A DNA stretch of 63,989 nucleotides, the filler included, from Octopus bimaculoides (Eukaryota): the NCBI RefSeq assembly GCF_001194135.2. It is 5 parts of 5 records of this genome, joined end to end, with 100 filler letters (N's around TTAATTAATTAA, not from the genome) between each part and the next. Parts side by side here need not be neighbours in the genome. Positions count along the whole stretch, not along the records: positions 1 to 19,563 come from NC_068995.1; 4 more parts are not named here. One strand, 5' to 3'. The notes beneath the pieces were generated by a model. It saw nothing but the letters and a program-made list of their open reading frames with translations, ran no database searches and was not told the DNA's origin. The translations under genes were made by a program, and so were the position numbers. This document shows positions 2,210 to 2,542 of the stretch, piece after piece (the first letter of the stretch is position 1; each line of letters opens with the position of its first letter).

Positions 2210-2542
2210 GAAAGCGGTGAGCTGGCAGAATCGTTAGGACGCCGGGCGAAATGCTCAGCGGGATTTCGTTTGCCACTACGTTCTGAGTTCAAATTCCGCC
2301 GAGGTCGTCTTTGCCTTTCATCCTTTCGGGGTCGATTAAATAAGTACCAGTTACGCACTGGGGTCGATGTAATCGACTTAATCCCTTCGTCTGTCCTTGT
2401 TTGTCCCCTCTATGTTTAGCCCCTTGTGGGCAATAAAGAAATAAGAAACGTTAGCACGCAGGGTGAAATGCTGGGGTCGATCTGATCGACTGGCCCCCTC
2501 CCACAAAATTTTGGGTCCTGTGCATAGAGTTAAAAAGATTAT
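2210..2542 (+). mobile_element. SINE family B composite: young unit with 67-bp alternative tail (2381-2447) followed by remnant of an older B copy
   Basis: Head GAGCTGGCAGAATCGTTAG, B-box-like GAGTTCAAATTCC, core GCCTTTCATCCTTTCGGGGTCGAT; restarts at ACGTTAGCACG (2448) and ends in a TGTGCATAGAGTTAAAAAGA tail. Confidence 0.85.

What the first reader, a model, noticed from the sequence alone, without database searches (positions are those of the whole stretch)
2210..2542. A young SINE-B variant found only inside older SINE-B copies: possible self-targeting (homing) SINE
Seen: at all three loci carrying the 63-68-bp alternative tail ATCCCTT.GTCTGTCCTTGTTTG.CCCCTCT.TGT.TAG.CCCTTGTGGGCA.TAAAGAAATA (2381-2447; 8842-8908 and 9231-9298; 24528-24590), that tail runs directly back into the 5' region of another, more decayed SINE-B body. 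The young units share the diagnostic CAGTTACGCACTGG where hosts have GTTGAG.ACTGG or GTTGCATTCTGG. Re-entry is at ACGTTAGCACG (about 20 nt into the head) at two loci and at GGTATTTCG (about 50 nt in) at the third. Host remnants end in two different old tail subtypes (TGTGC.TAGAGT at loci 1 and 3, AGAATTTAAAACC at locus 2). Old B copies without the module are common (9621, 36257, 40384, 40588, 44729), but no free-standing young unit occurs. Inference: a fixed dimeric master would carry one uniform right arm. Different decayed right arms instead suggest independent insertion into pre-existing copies, by target-primed reverse transcription in the tRNA-like head with the 5' end resolved by homology, regenerating the target each time. 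Sequence-specific retroelements of the R2, Utopia and Tx1 types are established; I do not know of a described SINE homing into its own family in cephalopods.
Basis: partly seen in the sequence, partly recalled or inferred. Interest (0 to 1): 0.75.

Follow-up and report, generated by a model that had tools for sequence, protein, structure and literature searches.

The report
Octopus SINE copies nested head-to-tail
An ordinary octopus SINE subfamily usually inserts into unique DNA, but its preferred landing motif (AGAA…) also sits in the head of its own family. New copies therefore sometimes land inside older copies and build dimers and short arrays; this is not a true self-homing element.

Summary
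The sequence facts mostly hold. Three units carrying the alternative tail (2210-2443, 8683-8905, 9077-9294) run through one identical junction, …AAAGAAATA|AG(A/G)AACGTTAGC, into another SINE-B. However, the junction at 8908 runs into an assembly gap, and the unit beyond the gap is young, not decayed.

"No free-standing young unit" is a small-sample artefact. In about 440 kb of Octopus bimaculoides, O. vulgaris and O. sinensis DNA I found 21 independent loci with this tail:
- 11 are free monomers with clean 8-19-bp target-site duplications (TSDs), several with precise empty sites in the other species.
- 4 are dimers or arrays inserted as whole units.
- Only 5 run into other SINE-B pieces.

TSDs often start with AGAA, the same motif as SINE-B head positions 17-20.

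Best reading: ordinary target-primed insertion at a short preferred motif that the family carries itself. The 5' junction is made seamless by homology. Local duplication follows (units 2 and 3 share private variants), and elsewhere dimers have become source genes.

Insertion into older copies is plausible here. Obligate self-targeting is refuted. Interest is modest.

The parts
2210..2443 (+). Unit u1: full-length SINE-B with the alternative 'tail A' (tail about 2381-2443, canonical end …GGGCAATAAAGAAATA).
   Evidence: Read. nhmmer model positions 1-235, score 284. 14 of 14 shared consensus CpG sites kept. 6.4% from the young consensus.
2444..2539 (+). Right arm d1: remnant of an older SINE-B. 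It holds consensus positions 17-45 (2444-2472), then a core piece GGGGTCGATCTGATCGACTG (2473-2492), then an old 'alpha' tail ending …TGTGCATAGAGTTAAAAAGAT.
   Evidence: The tail matches alpha-type copies such as L003:18941 and L002:22537.
8683..8905 (+). Unit u2: tail-A unit truncated at its 5' end at consensus position 12. It is followed by AGG (8906-8908) and the gap.
   Evidence: 12 of 13 CpG sites kept.
8909..9054 (.). Assembly gap (146 N) inside the run of young units. The contig ends on either side overlap by 24 nt (CCTTGTGGGCAATAAAGAAATAAG), so the number of units is unknown.
9055..9076 (+). Last 22 nt of a tail A (either u2's own tail or that of a further unit).
9077..9294 (+). Unit u3: tail-A unit starting at consensus position 17 (AGAAACGTTAGC…). 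It is 97.3% identical to u2.
   Evidence: u2 and u3 share two substitutions (positions 172 and 194) seen in 0 of 42 other copies. They also share a 1-nt insertion, TAGTCCCC, that u1 and L001 lack. 13 of 13 CpG sites kept.
9295..9442 (+). Right arm d3: older 'gamma'-type SINE-B from position 17 (AGGAACGTTAGC…), with several internal deletions. Tail …CTGTCAGAATTTAAAACC.
   Evidence: 5 of 7 CpG sites kept; 11.5% non-CpG difference from the old consensus.
9621..9810 (+). Old gamma-type SINE-B without the young module. It is flanked by an approximately 18-bp TSD, AATATTATTA[C/T]ATATT.. (9602-9619 and 9811-8928 region; second copy at 9811-9828), and lies directly in front of the next copy.
   Evidence: 22-nt flank repeat; 0 of 500 shuffles reach its score.
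9830..9891 (+). Head (positions 2-61) of a further old SINE-B copy, cut off by a (TA)n run and another SINE family.

Best explanation
The 'young' unit is an ordinary, recently active subfamily of a box-A/box-B type SINE, called SINE-B here. Its alternative 3' module (tail A) ends …GTGGG(C/T)A(A/G)TAAAGAAATA.

It moves by target-primed reverse transcription, with 8-19-bp TSDs that begin with a purine and very often with AGAA. This resembles its own 3' end (AAAGAAATA).

Every SINE-B head carries this motif at consensus positions 17-22 (GGC|AGAAAC or AGAATC). A fraction of new copies is therefore primed there, inside pre-existing SINE-B copies.

Because the nicked host and the new cDNA are homologous, the host's upstream overhang (positions 17 to about 33) can pair with the same stretch of the cDNA. 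The 5' junction then becomes seamless, with no second head and no visible TSD. The product reads as [host 1 to about 33 + new unit up to tail A][host 17 to end], which is the anatomy at 2210-2539 and 9077-9442.

The composite keeps the target motif twice and contains direct repeats. It can then grow by unequal recombination or slippage, as at window locus 2 (u2/u3). In other lineages it can be transcribed as a whole and become a dimeric source gene.

Shown:
- The junctions.
- The free copies with TSDs and empty sites.
- The AGAA bias of the TSDs.
- The dimers inserted as units.
- The copy-number change of an array between sister species.

Inferred:
- The homology-assisted resolution of the 5' junction.
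- That the window's composites arose in place.
For: (1) One junction is used throughout. …AAATA|AG(A/G)AACGTTAGC occurs at 2443/4, 9076/7 and 9294/5. The same junction occurs in O. bimaculoides at L005:21981 and in O. vulgaris/O. sinensis at L015:15832.

(2) It looks like a normal 3' junction. Free copies read …AAATA|AGAACTTTCC, |AGAAATAAAA, |AGAAATGTTT, |AGAAACCATG and |AGAAGATTTG. Between 5 and 7 of 15 TSDs start with AGAA.

(3) The family is a normal SINE. There are 11 free monomers with TSDs. Ten of the 11 insertions (7 monomers, 3 dimers/arrays) whose flanks could be mapped to the other species show a precise empty site.

(4) Right arms belong to three different old tail subfamilies: alpha at 2444-2539, gamma at 9295-9442, beta at L005:21981. 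One dimeric master therefore cannot explain them.

(5) Right arms are older than left arms.
- d3 is 11.5% from the old consensus at non-CpG sites with 5 of 7 CpG kept; u3 is 3% with 13 of 13 kept.
- At L015 the right arm keeps 2 of 13 CpG sites and the left arm 6 of 14.

(6) Free copies that are 5-8% diverged still have 15-18-bp perfect or near-perfect TSDs. The window composites, whose left arms are 3-6% diverged, have none. This is expected if the flanks are those of an old host.

(7) At L015:15832 the host's TSD (AATATTAAGAG.ATAG) flanks the whole composite. The O. bimaculoides ortholog keeps that TSD plus a remnant of host head positions 1-20.

(8) Growth at the DNA level is documented.
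- u2 and u3 share private variants.
- An O. vulgaris array has 1 full plus 6 partial units where O. sinensis has 1 plus 1 at the same TSD.

(9) Insertions into SINE-B are enriched.
- 5 of 21 loci lie in SINE-B, against 4.8% sequence coverage (p = 0.003).
- 2 of 21 lie at head position 17, against 1.1% of all AGAA sites (p = 0.02).
Against: - No orthologous 'host only' state was seen for any position-17 composite. The window's own orthologs could not be fetched.
- At L005:21915 the left arm is much more degenerate than the right arm, the opposite polarity.
- At locus 1 the supposed TSD copies differ at 3 of 18 positions (AGAATCGTTAGGACGCCG against AGAAACGTTAGCACGCAG). The duplicated stretch must therefore have been short, or the model is wrong there.
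- In the O. vulgaris dimers the right arm also looks older (13-14% from the left arm, with C>T changes), although the dimer was inserted as one piece. An 'older-looking right arm' is thus not proof of insertion in place.
- The test for host origin of the first 30 nt is not significant (0 of 3 against 6 of 11 CpG sites kept).
- Sample sizes are small, and the window was chosen because of this feature.
- No partner LINE was found.
Confidence: 0.55

Rival explanations
1. The composites are copies of dimeric source genes: [young unit][SINE-B from position 17 with an old tail] is transcribed from the left promoter and retrotransposed as one piece. In that case the decayed right arm was inherited from the master, not aged in place.
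For: This is exactly what happens for the second junction class (tail A | GGTATTTCG, position 50) in O. vulgaris and O. sinensis.
- Four dimers are flanked as wholes by TSDs, and three have precise empty sites in O. bimaculoides.
- Two independent dimers share right-arm-specific states: a 10-nt deletion and changes at positions 87, 96, 155, 202, 221 and 223.
Against: - The position-17 composites have right arms of three different old subfamilies, each with its own deletions.
- No clean TSD surrounds the window composites, although their left arms are no more diverged than free copies with perfect TSDs.
- No second copy of either composite type was seen in 458 kb.
Confidence: 0.17
2. Each composite was made in a single retrotransposition event by template switching. 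The reverse transcriptase starts on an old-tail SINE-B RNA, stalls or pairs at AGAAAC near its 5' end, and jumps to the 3' end (…AAAGAAATA) of a tail-A RNA.
For: - There is AGAAA microhomology between the tail end and head position 17.
- A permuted mosaic in O. vulgaris (L002:24259-24000, pieces 91-232 | 49-109 | 1-49) is absent from O. bimaculoides. It is hard to explain by simple nesting.
Against: - Both arms would then be the same age. Yet right arms are clearly more decayed at d3 and at L015:15832.
- The L015 host predates the split of the two species.
- A clean TSD around the whole would be expected and is missing in the window.
Confidence: 0.13
3. The structures arose purely at the DNA level. 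Neighbouring SINE-B copies recombined unequally or slipped at short homologies, producing satellite-like arrays with no insertion into a copy.
For: - u2 and u3 share private variants.
- There are 7 units in O. vulgaris against 2 in O. sinensis at one orthologous site.
- Old-type copies also lie head-to-tail (window 9621/9830; L005:28906-28488; transcript comp3721).
Against: - Recombination does not explain why a tail-A end is joined to the very same head position in hosts of three subfamilies and in two lineages.
- It does not explain why that position equals the family's TSD start motif.
- It accounts for array growth, not for the first junction.
Confidence: 0.1

Closest known systems
Dimeric and multimeric SINEs (Alu-type dimers; tRNA-derived dimers and trimers such as the colugo elements cited in PMC4758252; the shrew-mole dimeric SINE, PMC13023118)
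   Same: Two related monomers are joined head-to-tail at a fixed point. In O. vulgaris and O. sinensis the dimer is flanked as a whole by a TSD, and arm-specific differences are shared between loci.
   Different: In the window the right arms are not uniform (three old subfamilies) and no TSD surrounds the composite. The window shows the step that creates such dimers rather than an established dimer family.
Nick-site and primer choice guided by the 3' end of the RNA in RTE-related SINEs and LINEs (Nishiyama & Ohshima 2018, PMC6007223)
   Same: The first bases of the TSD correlate with the element's own 3' end. Tail A ends …AAAGAAATA and its TSDs often start with AGAA. Gamma-type copies end …GAAACC and their TSDs start with AATATT or AATAAT.
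   Different: The partner LINE and its clade are unknown here. The T-stretch signature described in that paper was not examined.
Sequence-specific non-LTR elements (R2, Tx1, Utopia) and SINEs that ride on them (e.g. SINEU, PMC4494074)
   Same: The same target position is used repeatedly, and head-to-tail arrays can result.
   Different: Those elements sit almost exclusively in one target sequence. Here 15 of 21 loci end in unrelated DNA, and the recognisable target is only about 4-5 nt.
Alu insertions into the A-rich parts of older Alus, and tandem arrays or satellites derived from SINEs (my own knowledge, not checked here)
   Same: A family carries within itself a sequence that its own integration machinery prefers, which produces nested and tandem copies. 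Arrays then change copy number by recombination.
   Different: The hot spot here lies in the promoter-like head, not in the tail. The 5' junction is seamless.
Octopus SINEs OK, OR1 and OR2 (Ohshima & Okada 1994, cited in PMC4824008 and PMC4758252)
   Same: Abundant octopus SINEs with A- and B-box heads. SINE-B may correspond to one of them or to a Repbase entry.
   Different: Their sequences are not in the held library, so identity could not be tested.

Membership tests
SINE (non-autonomous, moved by target-primed reverse transcription) | Short, non-coding, many dispersed copies | tested here: met
   Units of about 235 bp. 156 model hits in 458 kb from three Octopus species plus the window. 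ORFs in it are spurious.
SINE (non-autonomous, moved by target-primed reverse transcription) | Copies flanked by target-site duplications, with precise empty sites in relatives | tested here: met
   8-19-bp TSDs at 15 insertions. Flanks overlap by exactly the TSD in the other species at 10 of the 11 insertions that could be mapped. Not met for the two window composites themselves.
SINE (non-autonomous, moved by target-primed reverse transcription) | Head derived from a tRNA (or other small RNA) with internal Pol III boxes | tested here: inconclusive
   Box-A-like TGGCAGAAACG and box-B-like GAGTTCAAATTCC are visible. ARAGORN finds no tRNA and Rfam finds no family.
SINE (non-autonomous, moved by target-primed reverse transcription) | 3' tail shared with a partner LINE | tested here: inconclusive
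   A tail-only profile found no tail A outside SINE-B units in 458 kb. The last ~25 nt of tail A resemble the ends of the old tails (CCTTGTG…AGAAA), read by eye.
Sequence-specific ('homing') retroelement | Nearly all copies lie in one defined target sequence | tested here: not met
   11 free monomers and 4 unit-inserted dimers or arrays out of 21 loci lie in unrelated DNA.
Sequence-specific ('homing') retroelement | Use of the target exceeds what a short motif predicts | tested here: inconclusive
   2 of 21 at head position 17, against 1.1% of AGAA sites (p = 0.02). 5 of 21 in SINE-B, against 4.8% coverage (p = 0.003). Small numbers.
Dimeric SINE family | Fixed junction, whole dimer flanked by a TSD, arm-specific differences shared among loci | tested here: not met
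   For the window composites the junction is fixed, but there is no surrounding TSD and the right arms come from different subfamilies. The feature IS met by the position-50 dimers of O. vulgaris and O. sinensis.
SINE-derived tandem array | Head-to-tail units of constant period, with copy number differing between orthologous loci | tested here: inconclusive
   Window locus 2 has at least 2 units of about 218-222 bp with shared private variants, but a gap hides the middle. The feature is clearly met at L012:13243-14585 (7 units) against L013:12834-13254 (2 units).

The most novel reading that the evidence does not exclude
The tail-A subfamily has a real preference for two positions of its own family, head position 17 (AGAAAC) and position about 50 (GGTATTTCG), that goes beyond a 4-5-nt motif. 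Homology between the incoming cDNA and the nicked host both captures the event and restores the target. Arrays would then grow by repeated insertion, and new dimeric source genes would be born this way. That would be a soft form of self-targeting not described for SINEs.
Probability: 0.2. Interest if true: 0.6.

Novelty: new variant of a known kind. Interest (0 to 1): 0.33.

Why it matters
The locus gives a concrete, sequence-level route from monomeric SINE to nested composite. From there the route leads either to a dimeric source gene or to a tandem array, and all stages are visible in three closely related octopus genomes.

It also has practical consequences. Such composites break short-read assemblies: the gap at 8909-9054 lies inside one. 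They also mislead repeat annotation and age estimates, because an 'older' right arm can be inherited from a dimeric master.

It does not reveal a new class of mobile element.

Tried and rejected
- **DNA scans.** Exact-pattern scans of metagenome and prokaryote genome collections, with the tail and with the SINE core, gave 0 hits.
- **Literature.** A full-text search for the SINE sequences gave 0 papers. Octopus repeat papers say nothing on SINE structure. Albertin 2015 is not held.
- **Pfam.** The window holds no usable gene, so its own orthologs could not be fetched.
- **Head identity.** Rfam and ARAGORN found nothing on the head.
- **Partner LINE.** A search for a partner LINE with tail A found nothing.
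- **TSDs around the window composites.** None found.
- **A single dimeric master for the window.** Rejected, because the right arms come from three different subfamilies.
- **Template switching as the main route.** Rejected, because right arms are older and one host predates speciation.
- **The left arm at L005:21915 as a different SINE family.** Considered and rejected. It aligns to SINE-B positions 76-235, score 89 against 25±5 for shuffles.

Full report
**What is in the window**

The piece (1-19563) contains five assembly gaps, one of them at 8909-9054.

Three units of about 220-235 bp carry the alternative 3' module, which I call tail A:
- u1, 2210-2443
- u2, 8683-8905
- u3, 9077-9294

They are 92-97% identical to one another. 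A 15-mer from the tail occurs exactly three times. With up to 3 mismatches there are 7 sites, against 0.65 expected.

All readable tail ends continue in the same way: …GGGCAATAAAGAAATA then AGAAACGTTAGCACGC (2444, 9077) or AGGAACGTTAGCACGC (9295).

- After u1 comes a 96-bp remnant, d1 (2444-2539). It holds head positions 17-45, a 20-nt core piece and an old-type tail.
- After u3 comes d3 (9295-9442), an old-type copy with several internal deletions and a different old tail.
- After u2 come AGG and the gap. Beyond the gap lie the last 22 nt of a tail A and then u3, which is young and intact.

Locus 2 is therefore a head-to-tail run of young units ending in an old remnant. It is not 'a young unit in a decayed host' twice. 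The two contig ends at the gap overlap by 24 nt, which is typical of a repeat-induced assembly break.

ARAGORN and Rfam do not recognise the head as a tRNA. Only box-A-like and box-B-like motifs are visible.

**Getting comparison data**

No eukaryote DNA collection was searchable. Pattern scans of the metagenome and prokaryote collections found nothing. SINE reading frames hit a single 543-bp metagenome contig, L001.

A workable route was the following:
- I took complete ORFs from the O. vulgaris transcriptome held as a supplement of PMC9115989, plus a rhodopsin query.
- I looked them up exactly in the protein collection.
- I fetched the genes with 10-kb flanks from the O. vulgaris, O. sinensis and O. 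bimaculoides assemblies.

This gave 16 loci. Non-N DNA amounts to 185 kb from O. vulgaris, 140 kb from O. sinensis and 115 kb from O. bimaculoides, in orthologous sets. I scanned them with a profile of the young unit.

**The young subfamily is an ordinary SINE**

Outside the window there are 21 independent loci with tail A, counting O. vulgaris/O. sinensis orthologs once.

Eleven are free-standing monomers in unrelated DNA, with TSDs of 8-19 bp. Examples:
- L017:26645-26876 in O. bimaculoides, TSD AGAACTTTCCACTGC, 15/15 matching.
- L015:37370-37602, TSD AGAAATGTTTCCATATTG, 18/18 matching.
- L015:26568-26802, TSD 17/17 matching.
- L005:15469-15698 in O. bimaculoides, TSD 12/14 matching.

For seven of these monomers the flanks could be mapped to the other species. 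There they overlap by exactly the TSD, which marks a precise empty site. This holds in both directions: copies specific to O. vulgaris and a copy specific to O. bimaculoides.

The statement that no free-standing young unit exists therefore reflects only the 19.5-kb sample. The canonical element end is …GTGGG(C/T)A(A/G)TAAAGAAATA.

**A target motif that the family carries itself**

The TSDs begin with a purine. Five to seven of the 15 begin with AGAA (AGAAC, AGAAA, AGAAG). This echoes the element's own end, AAAGAAATA.

A link between the first TSD bases and the 3' end of the RNA is known for RTE-related SINEs and LINEs (PMC6007223). The old gamma-type copies show their own version of it. They end …GAAACC and their TSDs start with AATATT or AATAAT.

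In the SINE-B consensus built from 45 young and 60 old copies, positions 17-22 read AGAAAC or AGAATC. The window junction …AAATA|AGAAACGTTAGC is therefore indistinguishable from a normal 3' junction at a preferred target, and that target happens to lie in a SINE-B head.

The same junction occurs in O. bimaculoides at L005:21981, into a well-kept beta-type copy with an (ATT)n end. It also occurs in O. vulgaris/O. sinensis at L015:15832.

**Is the right arm a pre-existing host?**

Several lines say yes for this junction class.

1. The right arms belong to three old tail subfamilies: alpha (d1), gamma (d3 and the L015 host) and beta (L005). One master dimer is therefore excluded.

2. Right arms are older than left arms.
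   - d3 differs from the old consensus at 11.5% of non-CpG sites and keeps 5 of 7 CpG sites.
   - u3 differs from the young consensus at about 3% and keeps 13 of 13.
   - At L015 the right arm keeps 2 of 13 CpG sites, the left arm 6 of 14.

3. Free copies that are 5-8% from the consensus still have perfect or near-perfect TSDs. The window composites have left arms only 3-6% from the consensus, yet no detectable TSD. This fits flanks that belong to an old host.

4. At L015:15832 the host's own TSD (AATATTAAGAG.ATAG) flanks the whole composite. The O. bimaculoides ortholog keeps that TSD followed by GTGGTGAGCTGACAGAAAC, a remnant of the host head, and then a deletion. The host therefore predates the species split.

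None of the five composites has a second head or a visible TSD at the 5' side. This is what one expects if the host's top-strand overhang (positions 17 to about 33) pairs with the identical stretch of the new cDNA and primes second-strand synthesis. That step is inferred, not shown.

**Cautions**

- At L005:21915 the left arm is far more degenerate than the right.
- At locus 1 the two supposed TSD copies differ at 3 of 18 positions.
- The test for host origin of the first 30 nt at L015 is not significant.
- I found no host-only ortholog for any composite.
- An older-looking right arm can be inherited, as the dimers below show.

**Dimers and arrays**

A second junction, …AAAGAAATA|GGTATTTCG (position 50), is common in O. 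vulgaris and O. sinensis.

Four loci are [full unit][unit from position 50], flanked as a whole by a TSD (AGAAACCATGTCAAA; AGAAGATTTGATACATAA; GGTGGAGCATTGAA; TA(TA)CTACC…). Three of them have precise empty sites in O. bimaculoides.

Two independent dimers share right-arm-specific states: a 10-nt deletion and six substitutions, three of them C>T at consensus CpG sites. Their arms differ by 13-14%. A dimeric source gene therefore exists. It probably arose when a younger unit landed in an older one.

At one site O. sinensis has 1 full plus 1 partial unit, while O. vulgaris has 1 full plus 6 partial units of 185 bp, with the same TSD. Arrays thus change size at the DNA level.

In the window, u2 and u3 share two substitutions found in none of 42 other copies, plus a 1-nt insertion. 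They differ at six sites. Local duplication is the simplest reading.

The same position-50 junction also leads into non-uniform pieces:
- L013:18814, into an old-type arm with an old tail.
- L013:18587.
- L002:24259-24000, a permuted mosaic absent from O. bimaculoides.
- The metagenome contig L001.

Old-type copies are also often head-to-tail, for example at window 9621 and 9830, at L005:28906-28488, and in transcript comp3721.

**How strong is 'self-targeting'?**

Five of 21 loci run into SINE-B, although SINE-B covers 4.8% of the sampled DNA (p = 0.003). Two of 21 sit at head position 17, although such heads hold 1.1% of all AGAA sites (p = 0.02).

There is thus some excess beyond the short motif. 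The numbers are small, and retention bias or unit-copied composites could contribute. Obligate homing is excluded. A soft preference remains possible.

**Verdict**

Its headline claim, a variant found only inside older copies and a homing SINE, is not supported.

The phenomenon is a variant of known things: a target preference linked to the 3' end, nested SINEs, the birth of dimeric SINEs, and SINE-derived arrays. It is of moderate interest mainly because all stages are visible side by side in three octopus genomes.

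Noticed in passing
window 8909-9054: The assembly gap sits inside the run of near-identical young units. The sequence before it (…CCTTGTGGGCAATAAAGAAATAAGG) and after it (CCTTGTGGGCAATAAAGAAATAAGA…) overlap by 24 nt. The gap is probably a repeat-collapse artefact and the true unit number is unknown.
   Followed up: partly
window 9443-9455, 9602-9619, 9811-9828: AATATTATTA[C/T]AT follows the tail of d3, precedes the old copy at 9621 and follows its tail. The old copy has an ~18-bp TSD and lies directly in front of the next copy (9830). 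Gamma-type TSDs elsewhere also start with AATATT or AATAAT, which suggests a target motif specific to that tail.
   Followed up: partly
window 525-977, 3335-3779 (-), 7262-7753, 9897-10136 (-), 14959-15101, 16141-16245: A second, longer SINE-like family has many copies. It shares the core …CGATAGAATAAGTAC…GGGGTCGAT… with SINE-B (model positions ~120-171). It also contains TTTGTGTGTC.GTGTTTGT.CCCC, which resembles the first half of tail A, hinting at module shuffling between families.
   Followed up: partly
window 10770-11160: A third repeat has a clearly tRNA-like start (GGAGGCGCAATAGCCCAGTGGTTAGGGCAGCGGACTCGCGGTCATAGGATCGCGGTTTCGATTCCC). It explains the only GC-rich ORF of the window (10793-11152, minus strand), so that ORF is not a gene.
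   Followed up: no
L012:13243-14585 (O. vulgaris) vs L013:12834-13254 (O. sinensis): At the same insertion site and TSD (GGTGGAGCATTGA), O. vulgaris has 7 units and O. sinensis has 2. The site is empty in O. bimaculoides (L014:~13100). This is either a very recent array expansion or an assembly collapse.
   Followed up: partly
L002:24000-24259 (minus strand, O. vulgaris): SINE-B pieces lie in reversed order, 91-232 (with tail A) | 49-109 | 1-49, and then flank. Together they would make one full unit. O. bimaculoides (L003:~19955) lacks the block at the 3' boundary. The origin is unexplained; template switching is one possibility.
   Followed up: partly
L017:~12440-12480 (minus strand, O. bimaculoides): The remnant of the host head ends exactly at …CAGAAAC, the same point where the young unit is joined in O. 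vulgaris (L015:15832). This may be coincidence, or a recurrent break at this motif.
   Followed up: no
L003:21679-21733; L002:24000-24055: 'Head-only' SINE-B fragments (positions 1 to about 50-56) are followed by unrelated DNA. A 3' truncation is unusual for retroposed copies.
   Followed up: no
L005:7071-7254 and 6911-7028 (minus strand); orthologs L006:2441-2559 and 1797-1912: Old SINE-B copies are joined by a conserved linker (…TTTGAAACCCTTATGTTTCAGCAGATTAG|GG…). The same linker also precedes the first copy, so the repeat unit appears to be SINE plus linker. The arrangement is conserved between O. bimaculoides and O. vulgaris.
   Followed up: no
window 2690-2710, 2880-2930 and many other places: Dense (AC)n, (CATA)n and (TA)n microsatellites flank most repeats and border all five assembly gaps.
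   Followed up: no
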